Of a stretch of DNA of 64,000 nucleotides, positions 8,887 through 62,958 are shown piece by piece (positions within the stretch are counted from its first letter, which is position 1; every line of letters starts with the position of its first letter). The DNA is taken from positions 124,001 through 188,000 of IMG/VR virus record IMGVR_UViG_3300024502_000010. One strand, given 5' to 3'. The notes beneath the pieces are model-generated. The model worked only from the letters and a program-made list of their open reading frames with translations, searched no databases and was not told where the DNA came from. The translations under genes and the position numbers were made by a program.

Positions 8887-8992
8887 AGTAAGACCATCAG
8901 GGAAATGGTGGAGATACTATGCTCCCCGCACCCTTAGCGGGGATATGAGAGACGTAATTTATACACCCATAGGTCTCGGTTATCGGGTGTCT
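8887..8992 (-). ncRNA. PhotoRC-II-like structured psbA leader
   Basis: GAGAC...GUCUC, CACCC...GGGUG, CCCCGC...GCGGGG and ACCAU...AUGGU pairings in the psbA 5' UTR; family name from recollection, not a search. Confidence 0.6.
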
Positions 8993-9040
8993 AACAATGT
9001 TAAGGGAACGTTGCGTTCCGTAACATTTGTTTACCTATTT

Positions 9041-38689: not shown

Positions 38690-39429
38690 TCTACATCAAC
38701 CATAACTTCATGAGATTCAAATGTATAATCATCCGAATACTTATCTATGTCTTCTATTAGAGTGTTCATATATCGCGTATCTTCAACCATCATATCTCTT
38801 GTCGGTTGAAGAATCATCTGATATTTTTTAAAATTATTTTCTACCAAATATTCATCTAACTCACCACCAGTATTTGCATTTTCATAGTCATCAGATTCAT
38901 CATATTCAGAATCAATGAAGACGACATTTTTAATGTGGTCACCAAGACTCTTAATAACATTAAGATCGTTACCCTGCGTGTCAGTTTTTAAGACTTCTAC
39001 TACATCATAATCAATATTATCCAATATAGACTTTAAAGAAATGACATCCACATTATACACATTTTCTGTAGAATTCTCAAACCTACCCTTTGGTTTGAGT
39101 AGTGAAGAACATCCTGGATTATTTGGCCAAACATCCCAACCAAATCCATAAAATTCTTTTGTAGTTGGTTCTTCAACATTATCAATTGCAGCTTCGATAA
39201 GATAGAATCTATCTCCACCTCTTGTTCTAACTAAAAGTTCCTTTAGGGAAGAACAATTTTCTGGGTGGGGTTCAATACCAATAACAAAAACATCATCAAT
39301 AAAATTAATCCATCGTTTAGATCTTCCCATATCACAGGAAAGACCCACATCAATTCTAAGTTTTAGTCCAGATTTAAGTTTTTGATTAATATAATCAAAG
39401 TCGATATCCAAATCATTCTTTACTGTCAC
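38686..39429 (-). CDS. FkbM-family methyltransferase
   Basis: IDVG, GIEPHP and LKTDTQG.D motifs. Confidence 0.75.
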   Translation of the reverse strand: MTVKNDLDIDFDYINQKLKSGLKLRIDVGLSCDMGRSKRWINFIDDVFVIGIEPHPENCSSLKELLVRTRGGDRFYLIEAAIDNVEEPTTKEFYGFGWDVWPNNPGCSSLLKPKGRFENSTENVYNVDVISLKSILDNIDYDVVEVLKTDTQGNDLNVIKSLGDHIKNVVFIDSEYDESDDYENANTGGELDEYLVENNFKKYQMILQPTRDMMVEDTRYMNTLIEDIDKYSDDYTFESHEVMVDVE

Positions 39430-40525
39430 CTTTCACCTCTTCCACCTTTTTCATTTGCGTATTAATCCACTCATAAGTCTTGCGGATACCTTCTTCCAGA
39501 GTCTGTGAATAATCCCAACCAAGTTTTTCGCGAATCAAATCATTATTTGAATTGCGTCCACGAACTCCAAGAGGACCATCAATATGATTCTTCTCTACGA
39601 CTTTACCTGCAACTTTAGCAGCAGTATCTACGAGTTGATTAATGGTTACCATTTCTTCGGAACCAATATTAACAGGTCCGATGAAATCACTATTCATCAT
39701 TCTGCGGGTTGCTTCGATGCATTCATCAATATACAGGAAGGAACGAGTTTGTAGCCCGTCTCCCCACACCTCGATGGTTCCACCTTCCTCTGAAAGGTAG
39801 GCAACTTTACGACAGATTGCTGCGGGTGCTTTTTCTCTACCACCAGTCCAGGTTCCTTCAGGTCCAAAGATATTATGATACCTAGCAACCCGCACAGGAA
39901 TACCATAGTTGCGGTGATAAGCGAAGAAGAGTCTCTCTGAGAAGAGTTTTTCCCAACCATACTCGGAATCTGGGTTAGCAGGATAAGCGGACTCTTCACG
40001 ACAATCGGGATTGTCTGGATCTAATTGATTATGTTCTGGATACATACAAGCAGATCCAGAATAGAAAATTTTAGTTTTATAATCTAATACTGGGCGAACA
40101 CAAGCGGTGCCATTATCAACACCATCAAAAGTTTCATTCAATTGACGCTGTGCTTCAAGAACATTTAAGTTGATGGTTGCAGAGTTGTGCATAATATCAG
40201 CATCATTTTCTCCAGTGAAAACAAATCCTGCACCGCCCATATCAGCAGCGAACTGATAGATTTCATGGAAGGGTAGAATATATCGATAAGGAACTGAGTT
40301 ATAAAAGTTTCCTTGCTCTCCTTTAAATTCAAGAACACGGCGAACAAAGTTCATATCCCTCAGGTCTCCCTGAATGAATTCATCTGCTTCAGAAATTGAA
40401 AATTCTGGATACTTGAGGTCTACACCACGCACCCAATAACCTTCAGACTTTAATCTTCTTACCATATGACTTCCAATAAAGCCACCAGCACCTAACACAA
40501 GTGCCGTTTTCTTGTACTCACTCAT
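39413..40525 (-). CDS. GDP-mannose 3,5-epimerase-like NAD-dependent epimerase
   Basis: GAGGFIG, QFAADMGG.G, YGWEK, RYHNIFGP and GGREKAPAA motifs; start at MSEYKK. Confidence 0.9.
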   Translation of the reverse strand: MSEYKKTALVLGAGGFIGSHMVRRLKSEGYWVRGVDLKYPEFSISEADEFIQGDLRDMNFVRRVLEFKGEQGNFYNSVPYRYILPFHEIYQFAADMGGAGFVFTGENDADIMHNSATINLNVLEAQRQLNETFDGVDNGTACVRPVLDYKTKIFYSGSACMYPEHNQLDPDNPDCREESAYPANPDSEYGWEKLFSERLFFAYHRNYGIPVRVARYHNIFGPEGTWTGGREKAPAAICRKVAYLSEEGGTIEVWGDGLQTRSFLYIDECIEATRRMMNSDFIGPVNIGSEEMVTINQLVDTAAKVAGKVVEKNHIDGPLGVRGRNSNNDLIREKLGWDYSQTLEEGIRKTYEWINTQMKKVEEVKGDSKE

Positions 40526-40560
40526 AGACCAATAAATTTCTCTTAGTATATAGTATACAA

Positions 40561-40589
40561 AAAAAGAGGAGTTTATGCAACTCCTCTTA
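40561..40589 (-). terminator. terminator hairpin after the wcaG-type RNA
   Basis: AAGAGGAGT-TGCATAA-ACTCCTCTT followed by a T-run. Confidence 0.75.
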
Positions 40590-40596
40590 TGTAACT

Positions 40597-40692
40597 CAGG
40601 CTCGCCACTTGCCCTTTGACTGGAGGCAAGAAACCAGGCGGGAGAGAGTCCCATCCGCACCAATTGCCCTTGAGAGAGGCAATAAACTCATA
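40597..40692 (-). ncRNA. wcaG-type RNA: tandem pseudoknot modules each ending in UGGYG
   Basis: UGAG/CUCA with AUUGCC/GGCAAU then UGGUG; CUGG/CCAG with CUUGCC/GGCAAG then UGGCG; upstream of an NDP-sugar epimerase. Confidence 0.7.
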
Positions 40693-40724
40693 ATAGGGTC
40701 ATTTTGACTCCACCAGTATAAGTT

Positions 40725-40961
40725 TTAAGTCGTTCCAGGACTAAAGAAAAGTTGGGTTAACTTTGATATCTCGGTAATACCAAAGAATGCACATAAGAAT
40801 AGTACATCCCAAAGTTTAAGTTTAATAGCAAAGGGTACTGTGAGTAATCCTCCAACAACCTTTATCATTAAACCATATTTAAATTCTCCCCATAGCATAG
40901 TTTGATAACCAATTATGAGGAGAATGTTTCCAATCCAACGAAGTAGATCAGATTTTGCCAT
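40725..40961 (-). CDS. small multi-TM membrane protein
   Basis: ORF track; three hydrophobic segments. Confidence 0.7.
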   Translation of the reverse strand: MAKSDLLRWIGNILLIIGYQTMLWGEFKYGLMIKVVGGLLTVPFAIKLKLWDVLFLCAFFGITEISKLTQLFFSPGTT

Positions 40962-40989
40962 AAGGGGTTGCTCCCGACCAGTGCGCTTT

Positions 40990-41646
40990 TTAAGTCATCC
41001 CGGGACTTTCACCCATCATTGGACCATGCATATACTTGAGATTAAAAGTCATAACATATCTATCAAAATCAGAATTGCTTTCTTCTGTTTTGTGATTTAC
41101 CCATCCAGGAAAGATTACAAGTTCATTTGTTTTAACAGGAACTTCAATCCAAGGATACTGATATTTTACTTGTTTAGAGAAAGCAGATTCTACGACATCA
41201 TTTGCCCTATGATATTCTAATGGATCTCTTATCAAGAGATTTCCACTATTTGGTGGACAATGAAGGTAAGAACTAACAACAATATCAACAAATTGATGCT
41301 TGTGTTCTACAGTTCTTCCCCCTTTAGAATGACGATTAATCCAAGAATTTGCTACTTCAATTGGTTGATTGGAGAGACCAAATTCTTTGAGAATGTAAGG
41401 CATATTTGCATTCAAAAATTGAATGTATTTCCTATTCTCTGTCCAAGTATGAGGTTGCCCATTGATATTATGTATAACAGTAGATGTTGCTTCTCCTTTT
41501 TCTAAGGGTACTTGTTCTTTTTGATTTTTAGAATAGTCTACTGTCTCATCCGCTTTTGCTTTTAGACTATATTCGAAATTAAAATCGTAATAAAGTTTAA
41601 TAGCTACTTCGGAACAAATTTTTATTCGTTCAATATGATTTAACAT
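40990..41646 (-). CDS. putative 2OG-Fe(II) oxygenase (TIGR02466-like)
   Basis: SW.N....G.....H.H, SSY and LVIFPGWVNH...R.VMTFN motifs. Confidence 0.8.
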   Translation of the reverse strand: MLNHIERIKICSEVAIKLYYDFNFEYSLKAKADETVDYSKNQKEQVPLEKGEATSTVIHNINGQPHTWTENRKYIQFLNANMPYILKEFGLSNQPIEVANSWINRHSKGGRTVEHKHQFVDIVVSSYLHCPPNSGNLLIRDPLEYHRANDVVESAFSKQVKYQYPWIEVPVKTNELVIFPGWVNHKTEESNSDFDRYVMTFNLKYMHGPMMGESPGMT

Positions 41647-41651
41647 TTTAA

Positions 41652-41900
41652 TTAATCTTCATCGTCTTTCACATAACAAGGAACACGGTCTGGGTCCAAC
41701 CATTTAGCATATTCAATATCCTCCATTGCAGTAGAGCATTGTAGAACATTATCAAAAAGATAAATGTCATTCCAGCGTTTGGTGTACTCATTTTGTTTTT
41801 GGAGACGGTAATCGGGTTTACCGTTAATCTCAAGAATACCAACTTCTACGAAGCGATATCCTTCTCGTTCCAAAAGAACCTTAGGAAGTCGTGTTGTCAT
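41652..41900 (-). CDS. hypothetical protein
   Basis: ORF track. Confidence 0.75.
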   Translation of the reverse strand: MTTRLPKVLLEREGYRFVEVGILEINGKPDYRLQKQNEYTKRWNDIYLFDNVLQCSTAMEDIEYAKWLDPDRVPCYVKDDED

Positions 41901-42112
41901 GCAACTTCAACGGATTCAAGATCAGCAAGAACATATTCCATAAGCATCTCATAATCATCCAGTGGATCACCAGAGAATACTACACCCTCATTCTCATAAA
42001 AACGACGAACCTTTTTATAGAGTTTAGGATTCTTTACATCAAGGTAGAAGTCACCGTTTGCTGCACCACGAAGGGTTTGAACGTCTTTCTTGAATTTTGC
42101 TGTGAGAGTCAT
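41897..42112 (-). CDS. hypothetical protein
   Basis: ORF track; early promoter TTGACA-N18-TATAAT upstream. Confidence 0.75.
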   Translation of the reverse strand: MTLTAKFKKDVQTLRGAANGDFYLDVKNPKLYKKVRRFYENEGVVFSGDPLDDYEMLMEYVLADLESVEVA

Positions 42113-42165
42113 TGTTTTGAATGTTGACCTTAGTATTATAAGGGTTTGACAGGTAATCTGTCAAG

Positions 42166-42238
42166 TGCTCCTTGCGTGGATCGAACACGCCTCAGGCGAA
42201 TTATGAGTTCGCTGCATTCACCAGATTGCTAAAGGAGC
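42166..42238 (-). tRNA. tRNA with CAU anticodon (Met or Ile2)
   Basis: GCUCCUU/AAGGAGC acceptor; GCGAA-CUCAUAA-UUCGC; UUCGAUC T-loop. Confidence 0.85.
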
Positions 42239-42242
42239 AAGG

Positions 42243-42330
42243 TACGAGTGGGTGGATTCGAACCACCTCAAAGCCGCTAATCTGGCGGAAAGAGTTTATA
42301 AGACTCCTCTGACTACCAAGTCTCACTCGC
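42243..42330 (-). tRNA. tRNA-Ile(UAU) with long variable arm
   Basis: GCGAGUG/CACUCGU; GGAGU-CUUAUAA-ACUCU; variable arm CCGC/GCGG; UUCGAAU T-loop. Confidence 0.8.
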
Positions 42331-42369
42331 TTAAATTCAGGTCTATTATAGAGGACCTGAAACTCTGTG

Positions 42370-42600
42370 TCAACAACCTTCTTCGTGGTCGGTATGTATT
42401 CGTATCACATCGTCGTCCACTTTAGATTCTACTGCAAACTTTATGGTTTCGTTGTATGGAACTATCACTGCGTTTCTTTCTCCGTCAGTAATGACAAATG
42501 ATTCACCATTTTCTACTCTTTCTATTAGGTTGTCAAAATCTTCTTGAAACTCTTGAACTGTAAACTTTTGGAGATCTGAAAGTTCTGGATACATTTTCAT
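42370..42600 (-). CDS. Phd/YefM-like small protein
   Basis: FTVQEFQEDFDNLIERVENGESFVITD...AVIVP pattern. Confidence 0.55.
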   Translation of the reverse strand: MKMYPELSDLQKFTVQEFQEDFDNLIERVENGESFVITDGERNAVIVPYNETIKFAVESKVDDDVIRIHTDHEEGC

Positions 42601-42618
42601 AAAGTGAAGTTTTATGAG

Positions 42619-42694
42619 TCCGGATATTCAGATTTGAACTGAAATTATTCCTGCTCCCAAAGCAGGTGCCATGACCAAGTTAGGCGATATCCGG
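42619..42694 (-). tRNA. tRNA-Pro(UGG)
   Basis: CCUGC-UUUGGGA-GCAGG anticodon arm; UUCAAAU T-loop. Confidence 0.9.
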
Positions 42695-42811
42695 TTATTT
42701 GTTTTTATGTATAAACATAATACCAGCGAATGGTACGATTGTCAACCCACATCCACAAAGAAAAAGAAAGAAAGGACTTGCTGCTAGGGTTTCAACCAAG
42801 TGGAAAATCAT
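42695..42811 (-). CDS. 38-aa membrane peptide (MIFHLVETLAASPFFLFLCGCGLTIVPFAGIMFIHKNK)
   Basis: ORF read by hand; SD GAGGA; ATGA overlap. Confidence 0.55.
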   Translation of the reverse strand: MIFHLVETLAASPFFLFLCGCGLTIVPFAGIMFIHKNK

Positions 42812-43092
42812 CTTCCTCTCCAGTTCTTGTATTCATAATACATGTATTGGTCTGCTTCGTCAAGCCCCTGTAAAGGAGCTTGACAATCCCAATATGACCA
42901 TTCAATACAGAACTGTTTAATATGTATATCATTAGAAGCAGTTTTTACTCCATACATTCTTGAAAAGGCAGACATTGCAAACCAATATCTCTGCCTAATG
43001 TGCGGTTCCATTTCCCTTATAGTCTTTGGAGTCATAGTATCCGCCTCTTGTTCCGAAATAGAGTGTAGATAATACAAATGGAATAGCAACAA
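42808..43092 (-). CDS. hypothetical protein
   Basis: ORF track; true start probably MTPKTIRE. Confidence 0.65.
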   Translation of the reverse strand: MLLFHLYYLHSISEQEADTMTPKTIREMEPHIRQRYWFAMSAFSRMYGVKTASNDIHIKQFCIEWSYWDCQAPLQGLDEADQYMYYEYKNWRGR

Positions 43093-44953: not shown

Positions 44954-45038
44954 CGGAAAGGGTGGGATTCGAACCCACGGATGCTTTCACATCGCTAGTT
45001 TTCAAGACTAGAGCCTTCAACCACTCGACCACCTTTCC
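44954..45038 (-). tRNA. tRNA-Ser(UGA)
   Basis: CUAGU-CUUGAAA-ACUAG; long variable arm; G73. Confidence 0.95.
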
Positions 45039-45048
45039 AGTGGGAGGT

Positions 45049-45300
45049 TCAACGAACCTCAAAATCCAAACGCTTTACTTTGCGTTGGCGTCTTGCCTCT
45101 TGCCAGGCAATATCTTGTGAAGTCAGAACATTTGATTTTTGTTCTTTCTGAATAGAGTTTAACATAACAATACGAGATAAGTCAAGTGCTGAAATCTTAT
45201 CTCCACGAATTGTTGCCATATTAGGACAACCACAGGTCACTGTTTTTGAATGATGTCCTGTTATTTCTCTATTACAATCTTTGCATCTTATTGAAATCAT
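45049..45300 (-). CDS. small Cys-rich (zinc-ribbon-like) protein
   Basis: CKDC...CGCPN. Confidence 0.7.
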   Translation of the reverse strand: MISIRCKDCNREITGHHSKTVTCGCPNMATIRGDKISALDLSRIVMLNSIQKEQKSNVLTSQDIAWQEARRQRKVKRLDFEVR

Positions 45301-45315
45301 TATTCTTCATCCTAA

Positions 45316-45750
45316 TCATTGCAGGTGTGCTCTCAACTGCCAAACAAACTTACCATGAGATTCCATCAAATCTTGAACTAAATTTGCTGTAGCATATGAC
45401 TTTTGATTTTCAGACTCTTCCGAAATTTCTCCCATCAATTCACAAAACTTGGTATTGTTATCAAGAAGTTCTTGAAGCATTTCTTTTGCTCCGGTTGAAC
45501 TTGCTGCCTCTTTGATTTGAGTTACCTCAAGCATTCTTGAGAGAGAACTGAGAGGTTTTACATTCAGATAACGCATATGTTCTGAGAGACGATCAATCTC
45601 TTCAAACATAGTCTCATACTGACCACCAAAGAGTTGATGTAGTTGAGTGAAATCTTCACCTACAACATTCCAGTGAAATGCCCAAGTTTTATGGAATAAA
45701 ACAAAAAGCGATGACTGTGCATCACTCAAGAGTTTATAAAGTTTTTCCAT
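45316..45750 (-). CDS. dps: Dps/ferritin-like DNA protection protein
   Basis: HWNVVG..F..LH.LF..QY......D..SE and H.K..WQL motifs. Confidence 0.92.
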   Translation of the reverse strand: MEKLYKLLSDAQSSLFVLFHKTWAFHWNVVGEDFTQLHQLFGGQYETMFEEIDRLSEHMRYLNVKPLSSLSRMLEVTQIKEAASSTGAKEMLQELLDNNTKFCELMGEISEESENQKSYATANLVQDLMESHGKFVWQLRAHLQ

Positions 45751-45778
45751 TATACTCTTTTTGAAATATTTATGCAAA

Positions 45779-45795
45779 TGGGAGCAGAGGGATTC
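45779..45795 (-). pseudogene. orphan tRNA 3' end (T-arm 3' strand, acceptor 3' strand and A73)
   Basis: GAAT-CCCTC-TGCTCCC-A directly after the HNH gene. Confidence 0.6.
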
Positions 45796-45801
45796 ATTTT
45801 T

Positions 45802-46338
45802 TTACTTATTCATACAAAACTTAGGATGTTGCTTGTCCTTACTGTAACGTCCACCGTTACTCTTTTGGGGTGGTAAAGTTTTTTGTGCGTGGCAGTTGGG
45901 ACAGACCACTTGTAGATTTTCAGGGGCGTGGTTGAAAGGGTCGTCGTCTATGTGGTCCACCTCAAGGCAGGTTCGTCCGGTATGAATGTTTGTTCCAGAC
46001 CAACCACAAAGGGAACACTTACCCCCACTCGCTTCTAATAAGTAAGCACGAACACCGCTGGGAACATAACCCTGCCCTGTATGGTTCAGTTCTCCTACTT
46101 TCCACTTATCTATTGTCCATTGTCTCTTGGCTGCAGCACTACACTTGTTAGAACAGAACTTGCCAGTAGAACTCTTTTTCTTATAGTCAAACTCTACACT
46201 GCAGTAATTACAGATGGCGGTGTCCCAACCAGTTCTTTTCCTCTTAGGAGACTTCTTATTATTATAGGTTACAGAACACGAACGGGAGCAGAACTTAGGT
46301 TTATCGTTCTCACACCCGCAGTTTAAACAAGTAGTCAT
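45802..46338 (-). CDS. HNH homing endonuclease
   Basis: CSLC...LEVDHID.....N...NLQVVCPNCH; N-terminal FCSRSC / FCSNKC zinc repeats. Confidence 0.9.
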   Translation of the reverse strand: MTTCLNCGCENDKPKFCSRSCSVTYNNKKSPKRKRTGWDTAICNYCSVEFDYKKKSSTGKFCSNKCSAAAKRQWTIDKWKVGELNHTGQGYVPSGVRAYLLEASGGKCSLCGWSGTNIHTGRTCLEVDHIDDDPFNHAPENLQVVCPNCHAQKTLPPQKSNGGRYSKDKQHPKFCMNK

Positions 46339-46392
46339 AATAGAACCGAATACCTTTTATTATTTATAACACAAGTATTCGTTTTAGTAAAG

Positions 46393-46464
46393 TGCCCGAA
46401 GAGGGACTTGAACCCCCAACATTTTCGGTGTAAACGAAACGCTCTGCCTTTGAGCTATTCGGGC
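46393..46464 (-). tRNA. tRNA-Val(UAC)
   Basis: GCCCGAA/UUCGGGC; UUUCG-UUUACAC-CGAAA. Confidence 0.92.
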
Positions 46465-46466
46465 AA

Positions 46467-46540
46467 GCTCCCATCGTAGGTACTGCCCCTACCAATCTCT
46501 GATTAACAGTCAGGCCCGTTCGCTTGCTCGGTCGATGGGA
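46467..46540 (-). tRNA. atypical tRNA-Asn(GUU)
   Basis: UCCCAUC/GAUGGGA, G73; CUGA-CUGUUAA-UCAG; T-loop GGCAGUA; D-loop lacks GG. Confidence 0.7.
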
Positions 46541-46544
46541 ATAA

Positions 46545-46614
46545 AGGAAGTTACTGGACTTACACCAGTTCAAAGGGCATTGTCTGCTTGTCTCGATTCT
46601 TTGACTTAACTTCC
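46545..46614 (-). ncRNA. tRNA-like element with degenerate anticodon arm
   Basis: GGAAGUU/AACUUCC; D-like GUC/GAC; T-like ACUGG-UGUAAGU-CCAGU. Confidence 0.55.
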
Positions 46615-46654
46615 TTTGGCGTCTTTCTATGCTATCTGCATAACGACTACCAAG

Positions 46655-46726
46655 AGCGAAAGACGAGATTCGAACTCGCAACAACCTGCTTGGAAGGCAG
46701 GGACTCTACCGTTGAGTTACTTTCGC
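46655..46726 (-). tRNA. tRNA-Gly(UCC)
   Basis: CCUGC-CUUCCAA-GCAGG; U73. Confidence 0.95.
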
Positions 46727-46765
46727 AATGAGACAATCATAAACTATTTAAGTTTGATTGTCAAG

Positions 46766-46848
46766 TGCTCCAGAGAAGATTTGAACTTCCACGCTTTTTA
46801 AGGCGGCGGATTCTAAGTCCGCTGTGTCTACCGTTCCACCACTGAAGC
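46766..46848 (-). tRNA. tRNA-Leu(UAG)
   Basis: GCGGA-CUUAGAA-UCCGC; long variable arm; A73. Confidence 0.93.
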
Positions 46849-46931
46849 AGATGGAGTAAGCGTAATATACCTCATAAGGATATAACAGAGGCTTACCCTC
46901 TATCACTTTTATGTATGGAGATAAACTCCAA

Positions 46932-47004
46932 CAGGCACAGAGGGACTCGAACCCCCAATCGTCATCTTAGAAGGATGTTGCATTATCCATTATGCTATGT
47001 GCCC
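46932..47004 (-). tRNA. tRNA-Arg(UCU)
   Basis: CAUC-CUUCUAA-GAUG; UUCGAGU T-loop. Confidence 0.93.
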
Positions 47005-47009
47005 ATAAA

Positions 47010-47060
47010 GTAGGTTCCTATCGCCGCCATTCCTGAACCTACCGAAGGGGAATGCCGCAG
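47010..47060 (-). ncRNA. candidate H-type pseudoknot RNA in a tRNA spacer
   Basis: P1 CUGC..CAUUCC/GGAAUG-GCGG; P2 GUAGGUUC/GAACCUAC. Confidence 0.55.
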
Positions 47061-47109
47061 TTGATTTCTCAACTCTTATATTGTACCAGTTGTTTGGAAA
47101 CTGGTCAAG

Positions 47110-47181
47110 TGGGAAATGGTGGATTTGAACCACCGACCTCTGCGTTATCAGCACATTGCTCTACCACTGAGCTAATCTCCC
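47110..47181 (-). tRNA. tRNA-Ile(GAU)
   Basis: UGUG-CUGAUAA-CGCA; canonical D and T arms. Confidence 0.93.
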
Positions 47182-47273
47182 TGGCGGAAGTGGTTGGATT
47201 CGAACCAACGGATGCACTTAGGTACATCGGCGGATTAGCAATCCACTGCATTAGACCTCTCTGCCACACTTCC
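47182..47273 (-). tRNA. tRNA-Ser(GCU), CCA encoded
   Basis: GUGGA-UUGCUAA-UCCGC; long variable arm. Confidence 0.95.
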
Positions 47274-47275
47274 AA

Positions 47276-47347
47276 TAGTCCCTACGGGAATCGAACCCGT
47301 GTCTACACCGTGAAAGGGTGGTGTCCTAACCGCTAGACGAAGGGACC
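47276..47347 (-). tRNA. tRNA-Glu(UUC)
   Basis: CACC-CUUUCAC-GGUG. Confidence 0.95.
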
Positions 47348-47350
47348 AGG

Positions 47351-47432
47351 TGGGCAGGGAGGGATTTGAACCCCCGTAGGCAGAGCCAGCGGATTTACAG
47401 TCCGCCTCCATTAACCACTCGGACACCTACCC
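47351..47432 (-). tRNA. tRNA-Tyr(GUA)
   Basis: GCGGA-CUGUAAA-UCCGC; long variable arm. Confidence 0.95.
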
Positions 47433-62886: not shown

Positions 62887-62958
62887 TGGAGTGTAAGGAA
62901 ATCGAATCCTTATTGCTGGAATGCAAATCCAGAGTAATAACCGTTATACGAACACCCC
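62887..62958 (-). tRNA. tRNA-Ala(UGC)
   Basis: GGGGUGU/ACACUCC with G3-U70; CUGGA-UUUGCAU-UCCAG. Confidence 0.9.

What the first reader, a model, noticed from the sequence alone, without database searches (positions are those of the whole stretch)
40597..41007. Repeated RNA module captures the stop codons of two unrelated genes ahead of the wcaG-type RNA
Seen: two 34-nt copies, AGTCCCGGGATGACTTAAAAAGCGCACTGGTCGG (40974-41007) and AGTCCTGGAACGACTTAAAACTTATACTGGTGGA (40709-40742), match at 24 of 34 positions. An oxygenase and an unrelated membrane protein therefore end in SPGMT-stop and SPGTT-stop. Each copy has an AGUC/GACU stem and ends in a UGGY(G/C) motif, like the two pseudoknot modules that follow, giving four UGGY units in series with an ORF interleaved. 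Inference: a modular protein-binding RNA array that also serves as a recombination point for gene-cassette gain, or that senses ribosome termination.
Basis: partly seen in the sequence, partly recalled or inferred. Interest (0 to 1): 0.6.

Follow-up and report, generated by a model that had tools for sequence, protein, structure and literature searches.

The report
Extra wcaG-type pseudoknot units overlapping gene ends
The two 34-nt copies are real: they are extra, unannotated small RNA pseudoknot units of the kind that make up the cyanophage wcaG RNA, and neighbouring genes have been packed against them so tightly that they borrow the RNA's own UAA as their stop codon.

Summary
Confirmed. The window is a T4-like cyanophage. 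On the minus strand, copy A (41008..40973) and copy B (40743..40708) lie upstream of the Rfam wcaG RNA (40691..40594) and an intrinsic terminator.

About 208 copies were found in about 120 cyanophage contigs, none matching an Rfam family. Each has:
- a 4-bp hairpin that covaries (98% paired);
- a 7-nt loop;
- an A-rich linker;
- a long-range pair between loop position 2 and linker position -3 (C-G 92, U-A 40, other 2 of 134);
- an invariant CUGGU;
- a G+C hairpin.

This is the same pseudoknot layout as the wcaG units.

Each genome has only 1-2 copies, always just upstream of its single wcaG RNA (own genome plus 12 of 13 isolates).

Of 131 first-in-array copies, 84 hold the upstream ORF's stop. 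At least 13 unrelated ORF families end there. The UAA is as frequent in copies that no ORF reads into (94% against 89%), so it belongs to the RNA.

Homology with relatives breaks at the module edges. The oxygenase and the membrane ORF are therefore cassettes inserted between units.

Protein binding, termination sensing and recombination remain untested.

The parts
40973..41008 (-). Module A core. Stem S1 AGUC 41007..41004 pairs with GACU 40996..40993. Loop CCGGGAU 41003..40997. Linker 40992..40982, starting with the oxygenase stop UAA 40992..40990. Loop C41002 pairs with linker G40984. CUGGU 40981..40977.
   Evidence: Model R1 46.1 bits; sequence; covariation of the stem and the long-range pair.
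40964..40976 (-). Module A 3' hairpin (CGGG-AGCAA-CCCC). It contains a GGAG Shine-Dalgarno-like stretch. The AUG of the 78-aa ORF follows 2 nt later (40961).
   Evidence: Sequence; RNAfold pairs GGG with CCC; the same arrangement occurs in relatives that carry the membrane ORF.
40708..40743 (-). Module B core. Stem AGUC 40742..40739 pairs with GACU 40731..40728. Loop CUGGAAC 40738..40732. Linker 40727..40717, starting with the membrane-ORF stop UAA 40727..40725. Loop U40737 pairs with linker A40719. CUGGU 40716..40712.
   Evidence: Model R1 43.1 bits; sequence; covariation.
40696..40711 (-). Module B 3' hairpin: GG-A-GUCA, loop AAA, UGAC-CC.
   Evidence: RNAfold minimum-energy structure. It is invariant in type-B copies, but it was part of the search pattern, so that invariance is not independent evidence.
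40594..40691 (-). Canonical wcaG RNA (two pseudoknot units, each followed by UGGYG).
   Evidence: Rfam RF01761, 102.9 bits, full length; the pseudoknot of unit 1 covaries in relatives.
40558..40588 (-). Intrinsic terminator: 10-bp stem, loop, then a U run. It closes the RNA array ahead of the epimerase gene.
   Evidence: Terminator scan; RNAfold; present after wcaG in S-SKS1, S-SRM01, Bellamy and SynMITS9220M01.
40990..41646 (-). 2OG-Fe(II) oxygenase cassette. Its last 5 codons and its stop lie in module A. It has no stop of its own upstream of the module.
   Evidence: Pfam PF13759 and phrog_81; no nucleotide match in about 130 related loci; homology resumes at 41007.
40725..40961 (-). 78-aa predicted three-helix membrane protein (phrog_2318) lying between modules A and B. 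Its last 5 codons and its stop lie in module B.
   Evidence: phrog_2318, E 3.8e-20, covering residues 2-70, so the module-encoded tail falls beyond the matched part. 15 homologues end in a type-B module. It is present or absent between A and B in relatives.
41652..41900 (-). gp206-like ORF (phrog_481). In most relatives this gene, not an oxygenase, runs into module A.
   Evidence: cluster 1 (38 members ending in modules); junction sequences.
39413..40525 (-). NAD-dependent sugar epimerase/dehydratase (wcaG-type gene) downstream of the terminator.
   Evidence: Pfam PF01370 and PF16363.

Best explanation
The two copies are additional, divergent wcaG-type RNA units. Each is a small H-type pseudoknot: a 4-bp stem S1, a 1-3-bp second helix S2 between the loop and the linker, and an A-rich third loop. 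It is followed by CUGGU(C/G)G and a G+C hairpin. Together with the two units of the canonical wcaG RNA they form a four-unit, cis-acting structured RNA at the 3' end of an early operon. The array ends in an intrinsic terminator just ahead of the sugar-nucleotide genes. My inference is that the array acts as one regulatory leader. Its folded or effector-bound state would set read-through of that terminator, and the extra units would add further UGGYG-bearing sites for the same still unknown ligand or protein. The units fold autonomously, so genes can sit in the spacers between them. The oxygenase and the membrane ORF are such inserted cassettes. They abut the next unit at its first nucleotide, carry no stop of their own, and read 5 codons through S1 to the UAA that the motif always has after S1. 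Shared tails such as SPG(M/T)T are by-products of the RNA sequence. Shown: conservation, structure, linkage to wcaG, ORF overlap and breakpoints. Inferred: the regulatory role and the shared effector.
For: Family: the pattern scan and model R1 find about 208 copies in about 120 cyanophage contigs, at 26-51 bits against a background of 13.5 bits or less. No Rfam family matches them at E up to 10. Structure: S1 is 98% paired with compensatory changes at 3 of 4 pairs. The loop-linker pair is C-G 92, U-A 40, other 2 of 134, and 70 of 70 in type A. Every shuffle and slide control falls far below these values. Same topology as wcaG: the pseudoknot of canonical unit 1 covaries (AGG/CCU 21, GAG/CUC 16 and others; 64 of 72), and is followed by an A-rich loop and UGGUG. 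The discoverers' raw alignment already places module-type hairpins in the first half of wcaG. Linkage: there are 1-2 copies per genome, always on the same strand as the single wcaG RNA. In the window's genome and 12 of the 13 isolate genomes they lie upstream of wcaG, 6 nt to about 750 nt away. Transcription context: consensus sigma-70 promoters lie upstream of the operon, and a terminator follows wcaG directly. ORF overlap: 84 of 131 first-in-array copies contain the upstream stop, and at least 13 unrelated ORF clusters end there. UAA follows S1 in 89% of ORF-adjacent copies and 94% of tandem-second copies. Breakpoints with relatives fall at 41007, 40961 and 40744.
Against: Thermodynamic folding of the window copies is no better than shuffles. 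S2 is only 1-3 bp in most copies. The function of wcaG itself is unknown, so 'shared effector' rests on analogy. In five isolates wcaG is followed by tRNA genes rather than a protein gene. Up to about 750 nt of coding sequence can separate modules from wcaG (S-CAM3), which sits poorly with a single cooperative aptamer. Most loci were collected with a type-B pattern, which biases type counts and makes the type-B 3' hairpin look invariant.
Confidence: 0.6

Rival explanations
1. Translation-coupling or termination-sensing device. The ribosome finishing the upstream ORF melts S1 and the pseudoknot. This opens the following hairpin, whose 5' arm is a GGAG Shine-Dalgarno-like stretch, and so switches on the next ORF or changes how wcaG folds.
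For: 64% of first-in-array copies hold the upstream stop, mostly 0-2 nt after S1. In the A-ORF-B arrangement the start codon lies 2-3 nt after a hairpin containing GGGAG or GGUGA. Both module types carry GGAG.
Against: UAA is equally conserved where no ORF reads in. 36% of first copies are not overlapped. Most modules are followed by another RNA unit rather than an ORF: A-B 55, B-A 13, against A-ORF-B 18. Some copies follow tRNA genes.
Confidence: 0.15
2. DNA-level recombination site, PeSL-like, whose role is to mediate cassette gain and loss. RNA structure would be secondary.
For: Indel breakpoints fall at module edges in many relatives, and upstream gene content differs among phages sharing the A-membrane ORF-B-wcaG block. 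An HNH endonuclease ORF ends in a module in L049. Conserved 35-50-nt patches could support crossover between co-infecting phages.
Against: There are only 1-2 copies per genome, all at one locus, whereas PeSLs are scattered through hyperplastic regions and carry a promoter. The covariation is of RNA type, includes a non-nested long-range pair, and the modules keep a strict strand relation to wcaG. The same breakpoints are expected if insertions survive only between functional units.
Confidence: 0.12
3. Array of binding sites for a multimeric RNA-binding protein that recognises the GGA hairpin loops or the four UGGYG sites. It would titrate the protein or be regulated by it.
For: Loops read N-Y-G-G-A-N-N in most copies, and the window has four UGGYG sites in series. 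The wcaG discoverers noted that duplicated UGGYG may bind a dimeric protein.
Against: No CsrA homologue is found in the phage genome, while the controls are positive. Loops also read GGG or GGU. Loop position 2 is used by the long-range pair. No candidate protein is known.
Confidence: 0.12
4. Chance similarity or a recent local duplication without function.
For: 24/34 identity is reached by 3 of 200 shuffles. Folding energies are unremarkable.
Against: There are hundreds of conserved copies across distant cyanophage genera, with compensatory changes.
Confidence: 0.01

Closest known systems
wcaG RNA motif (Rfam RF01761; Weinberg et al. 2010, PMC2864571)
   Same: Same phages, same locus and same strand. 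Both have a pseudoknotted hairpin with an A-rich third loop, followed by UGGYG and a G+C hairpin. In the 2010 raw alignment some sequences have module-type hairpins aligned as the first half of wcaG.
   Different: The helix lengths are swapped: S1 is 4 bp and S2 1-3 bp in the modules, against S1 3 bp and S2 4-7 bp in wcaG. The Rfam model does not detect the modules. The modules are extra units upstream of a complete wcaG. ORFs can separate them from it, and upstream ORFs overlap them.
PeSL promoter-terminator cassettes of T4-type phages (PMC2839356, PMC4122927)
   Same: Short conserved motifs at the boundaries of variable ORF cassettes in T4-like genomes.
   Different: PeSLs combine a sigma-70 promoter with a terminator stem-loop and occur many times per genome. 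The modules have no promoter or U tract and occur once or twice, only next to wcaG.
Small H-type pseudoknot riboswitch aptamers (preQ1-I, SAM-II; from my own knowledge)
   Same: About 34 nt, with a short stem, an A-rich tail and a very short second helix formed by the loop and the 3' tail. Tandem copies occur.
   Different: No sequence or covariance-model similarity. No ligand is known. The loop and tail consensus differ.
CsrB/RsmZ-type GGA-hairpin arrays (from my own knowledge)
   Same: Repeated short hairpins with GGA in the loop, plus a second GGA in a Shine-Dalgarno-like stretch.
   Different: No CsrA in the phage. The A of GGA is not invariant, and the loop takes part in a pseudoknot pair.

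Membership tests
Rfam wcaG (RF01761) | Scores above the family gathering threshold (42 bits) with the Rfam covariance model | tested here: not met
   Only 40691..40594 matches (102.9 bits). With E up to 10 over 40560-41100, neither module matches wcaG or manA.
Rfam wcaG (RF01761) | Hairpin unit followed by a conserved UGGYG | tested here: met
   CUGGUCG (A) and CUGGUGG (B) are invariant in 134 copies. UGGYG is named as a wcaG feature in the 2010 supplement.
Rfam wcaG (RF01761) | Pseudoknot order S1a-S2a-S1b-A-rich loop-S2b before UGGYG | tested here: met
   Modules: S1 and the loop-linker pair covary. Canonical unit 1: 64 of 72 have the upstream triplet paired with the loop, with covariation. 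Whether this reflects common descent or only a shared layout remains an inference.
Rfam wcaG (RF01761) | Cyanophage or marine location upstream of sugar-nucleotide or high-light genes | tested here: met
   All copies lie in cyanophage-type contigs, upstream of wcaG and of epimerase, GDP-mannose dehydratase, hli or tRNA genes.
PeSL (promoter-early stem-loop) | Sigma-70 promoter joined to a terminator stem-loop | tested here: not met
   The scan finds no promoter or terminator at the modules.
PeSL (promoter-early stem-loop) | Many copies spread over hyperplastic regions of one genome | tested here: not met
   Two copies in the 204,829-bp own genome, and 1-2 in five other genomes.
CsrA/Rsm-binding RNA | A CsrA-family protein available in the system | tested here: not met
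   PF02599 is absent from the phage genome, with positive controls. The host was not tested.
Intrinsic terminator | G+C stem followed by a U run | tested here: not met
   No U run follows either module hairpin. The true terminator is at 40588..40564.
preQ1-I / other Rfam pseudoknot riboswitches | Match to the family covariance model | tested here: not met
   No match at E up to 10.

The most novel reading that the evidence does not exclude
The wcaG locus encodes a modular switch of two to four autonomous mini-pseudoknot units. Each unit's first stem doubles as the last codons of whatever cassette gene lies upstream. Ribosome traffic on the variable cassettes would then gate the folding of the units. 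Through them it would gate read-through of the terminator into the sugar-nucleotide, hli or tRNA genes. The same conserved units would also give co-infecting phages the homology to swap those cassettes.
Probability: 0.12. Interest if true: 0.8.

Novelty: new variant of a known kind. Interest (0 to 1): 0.6.

Why it matters
wcaG has been an orphan riboswitch candidate since 2010. This work shows that it is usually preceded by one or two further units of the same pseudoknot-plus-UGGYG design. That redefines the element as a variable-length array and raises the number of putative effector sites from two to as many as four. It also gives a 36-nt minimal unit with a defined tertiary pair that can be probed or crystallised. 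It explains why unrelated cyanophage proteins share odd C-terminal tails such as SPGMT, DTDGL and DMESL. Finally, it marks a precise and recurrent cassette boundary in the hypervariable region of cyanomyovirus genomes.

Tried and rejected
- Three-frame stop 'translation insulator': stops in all three frames occur in 10% of modules against 6% of shuffles, so this was rejected.
- CsrA-type binding: no CsrA in the phage, and the loop is not strictly GGA.
- Thermodynamic support: RNAfold z-scores are +0.5 and +0.2, and for copy A the minimum-energy fold is not the conserved one. The structure claim therefore rests on covariation only.
- Known family: Rfam at E up to 10 gives only noise hits, a Tetrahymena snoRNA and a microRNA.
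- Genome-wide repeat: no further copies in the own genome.
- Bacterial occurrence: 78 of 80 exact matches to the type-B core in bacterial genomes are chance, scoring 13.5 bits or less. Two MAG contigs carry true modules plus the wcaG 5' half.
- Literature: searches found no description of the modules. Anonymous entries in the 2023 catalogue of viral structured RNAs (PMC10690425) could not be checked.
- Embedded promoter: a -35-like TTGCAT in the terminator loop with a -10-like box after the U run was seen in relatives. It does not pass the promoter scan in the window, so it is only noted.
- Not used: no protein-complex, structure or large protein searches were run, because the question concerns RNA.

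Full report
Setting. The window comes from a T4-like cyanophage. Its nearest DNA matches are Synechococcus myoviruses. It carries PhotoRC-II and wcaG RNAs and a tRNA array. Around the finding, all genes lie on the minus strand, in this order:
- 71-aa ORF (42112..41897)
- gp206-like ORF (41900..41652)
- 2OG-Fe(II) oxygenase (41646..40990)
- copy A
- 78-aa membrane ORF (40961..40725)
- copy B
- wcaG RNA (40691..40594)
- intrinsic terminator (40588..40564)
- NAD-dependent epimerase (40525..39413)

Consensus sigma-70 promoters lie upstream at 42373..42345 and 42164..42135.

Observation. The two ORFs end SPGMT-UAA and SPGTT-UAA, and the proteins are unrelated. On its own the 24/34 match is weak, because 3 of 200 shuffles reach it. 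RNAfold does not favour the copies over shuffles. The case for the modules rests on comparison with other phages.

A conserved family. Four isolate phages showed the same element just upstream of their wcaG RNA. A scan of viral contigs for the type-B core returned more than 120 loci. Nearly all of them carry the full element, often twice in tandem. The element consists of:
- a 4-bp stem, mostly AGUC/GACU;
- a 7-nt loop reading N-Y-G-G-A-N-N;
- a linker that begins (N)UAAA and is 9 or 11 nt long;
- an invariant CUGGU;
- then either CGG..CCC (type A, as in copy 1) or GGAGUCA..UGACCC (type B, as in copy 2).

No Rfam family matches either copy at E up to 10. A covariance model of the 36-nt core (R1) finds 208 copies in about 1.03 Mb of these loci, at 26-51 bits. 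As a negative control I used 586 kb of bacterial DNA chosen for containing the bare type-B core. Nothing there exceeds 13.5 bits, apart from two MAG contigs that carry the same locus with the wcaG 5' half.

Structure. On 134 distinct copies the stem is 98% paired, with compensatory changes at three of its four pairs (for example U-A 103, A-U 24, C-G 7). Loop position 2 pairs with the third-last linker base: C-G 92, U-A 40, other 2. In type A alone this pair holds in 70 of 70. No shuffle or slid register comes close. The neighbouring loop G pairs with the next linker base in about 80% of the 11-nt-linker copies. Rarer variants have longer loops in which the same loop-linker helix reaches 5 bp (L005, L006, L031, L032, L084).

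Each module is therefore a small H-type pseudoknot, in the order S1a, S2a, S1b, A-rich loop, S2b, followed by UGGYG. The canonical wcaG units have the same order. In wcaG unit 1 the triplet before UUU pairs with the 5' part of the hairpin loop in 64 of 72 sequences, with covariation (AGG/CCU, GAG/CUC, UGG/CCA, UUG/CAA). The loop then continues A-rich, and UGGUG follows the hairpin. In the discoverers' raw 2010 alignment several sequences have module-type hairpins aligned as the first half of wcaG. Their supplement also notes the duplicated UGGYG. I therefore read the modules as extra, divergent wcaG-type units that the Rfam model misses. With them the window has four units in series.

Distribution. 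The window's whole genome (204,829 bp) holds only these two copies. Five other genomes hold one or two each, all within about 320 nt upstream of their single wcaG RNA. I also picked eight isolates from the wcaG side. Seven of them have modules upstream of wcaG, on the same strand and 6 nt to about 750 nt away. S-RS29 has none. Architectures per locus are A-B 55, B 26, A-ORF-B 18, B-A 13 and A 7. These counts are biased by the type-B search pattern.

ORF ends. Of 131 first-in-array copies with enough upstream sequence:
- 84 contain the stop of an upstream open frame of 45 codons or more;
- 29 have that stop 3-30 nt upstream;
- 15 have it 31-120 nt upstream;
- 3 have no such frame.

The stops used are bases of the motif itself. 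UAA at the start of the linker accounts for 52, UGA spanning the loop and the 3' arm for 9, and a stop at the 5' edge of the stem, mostly UAG, for 14. The ORFs fall into at least 13 unrelated clusters:
- gp206-like (38)
- the 78-aa membrane protein (15)
- a phrog_552-like 71-75-aa family (11)
- several 2OG oxygenases
- a cupin
- an HNH endonuclease
- others

The same tails recur on unrelated proteins: SPGMT on the oxygenase and on the membrane protein, and DMESL on gp206-like proteins and on a 207-aa protein. Compensatory changes in the stem alter the residues, as in DTDGL against VTDGL. Selection therefore acts on the RNA and not on the peptide. UAA directly after the stem is present in 123 of 138 ORF-adjacent copies and in 64 of 68 tandem-second copies that no ORF can enter. 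The stop codon is a feature of the RNA that ORFs use. An idea that the module supplies stops in all three frames did not hold.

Cassettes. I compared 39000-43000 with about 130 related loci by blastn. Homology runs through the 71-aa and gp206-like genes to about 41656. It then resumes at 41007 (first base of module A), stops again at 40961 (end of module A) and resumes at 40744 (start of module B). No related locus matches the oxygenase gene at the DNA level. In relatives, gp206 or the 71-aa gene abuts or runs into module A. The oxygenase is therefore an insertion between the gp206 stop and the first base of S1. It has no stop of its own. The membrane ORF is a second present-or-absent insertion between A and B. 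ORFs between the modules and wcaG likewise end at the first bases of wcaG. This fits tight packing of genes against autonomous RNA units. It would equally fit crossover within the conserved units, and the present data cannot separate the two.

Mechanism. The shown facts are:
- a conserved, strand-specific pseudoknot unit tied to wcaG;
- its place at the 3' end of an operon, directly before a terminator;
- overlap with ORF ends;
- cassette boundaries at the unit edges.

What follows is inferred. The array works as one cis-regulatory leader controlling terminator read-through into the sugar-nucleotide genes, or into hli or tRNA genes in other phages. The extra units add sites for the same unknown effector. 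I give this 0.6 as a package, with most of the uncertainty on the regulatory part. The rivals are:
- a termination-coupled switch that exposes the GGAG in the following hairpin (0.15);
- a DNA recombination site (0.12);
- a protein-binding array (0.12).

The last two are not exclusive with the main reading. No CsrA homologue is present in the phage.

Novelty. I found no paper describing these upstream units, their tertiary pair, their overlap with gene ends or their cassette boundaries. However, wcaG itself and its UGGYG repeats are known, and the 2010 alignment implicitly contains module-type halves. I rate the finding a new variant of a known kind.

Limits. Most loci were collected with a type-B pattern. 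E-values from the short-calibrated model are rough, and the bit-score separation is the safer measure.

Noticed in passing
window 40540-40590 (- strand); L001 1640-1690, L002 1630-1670, L004 1625-1665: The terminator after wcaG has a conserved loop (GUUGCAUAAAC, containing a -35-like TTGCAT). In relatives a TATAAT-like box follows the U run, which would make it a composite terminator-promoter like a PeSL. In the window the box is TATACT, and the pair does not pass the promoter scan.
   Followed up: partly
L131 1933-2149; L134 1497-1687; L135 1497-1748; L136 1499-1663; L137 1471-1664: In S-CREM1, S-CAM1, Sf-CH11, S-H35 and S-CAM3 the wcaG RNA is followed by a tRNA gene rather than a protein gene. 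This sits oddly with the usual description of wcaG as a 5' UTR element of sugar genes.
   Followed up: partly
L005, L006, L031, L032, L084, L088, L105 (just downstream of their type-B module): These loci hold a third unit type. It has a longer loop whose GUCG(G/U) pairs with (A/C)CGAC in the linker (4-5 bp), followed by CUGGUGCGG. It looks intermediate between the modules and wcaG unit 1.
   Followed up: partly
L049 7814-8254 (- strand): A 147-aa ORF with HNH-endonuclease-like cysteine and histidine motifs ends (EDTDGL) inside a type-A module, placing a possible homing nuclease at the cassette boundary.
   Followed up: no
L035, L071, L110: Open frames of 45-101 codons read straight through a whole type-A module (peptide PGRDDPK) and stop at the UAA of the next type-B module. 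They may be spurious, or real genes that span a module.
   Followed up: no
L185 (Crocinitomicaceae MAG contig) and L166 (Acidimicrobiaceae MAG contig): Two contigs filed under bacterial MAGs carry true modules followed by the wcaG 5' half. They are probably cyanophage contigs binned with bacteria.
   Followed up: partly
window 42370-42600 (- strand): A 76-aa Phd-like antitoxin homologue (phrog_375) lies upstream of the operon, next to consensus sigma-70 promoters with 12 of 12 matches at 42373..42345 and 42164..42135.
   Followed up: no
window 8909-9002 and 44954-47432, 62887-62958 (- strand): A PhotoRC-II RNA (84 bits) and ten tRNA genes are present, nine of them in one cluster.
   Followed up: no
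window 40725-40961 (- strand): The 78-aa ORF appears to have three hydrophobic helices, judged by eye, and belongs to phrog_2318 (unknown function). It has no Pfam match. It always travels with one type-B module subtype (loop CUGGAAY, linker ending CUUAUA).
   Followed up: partly
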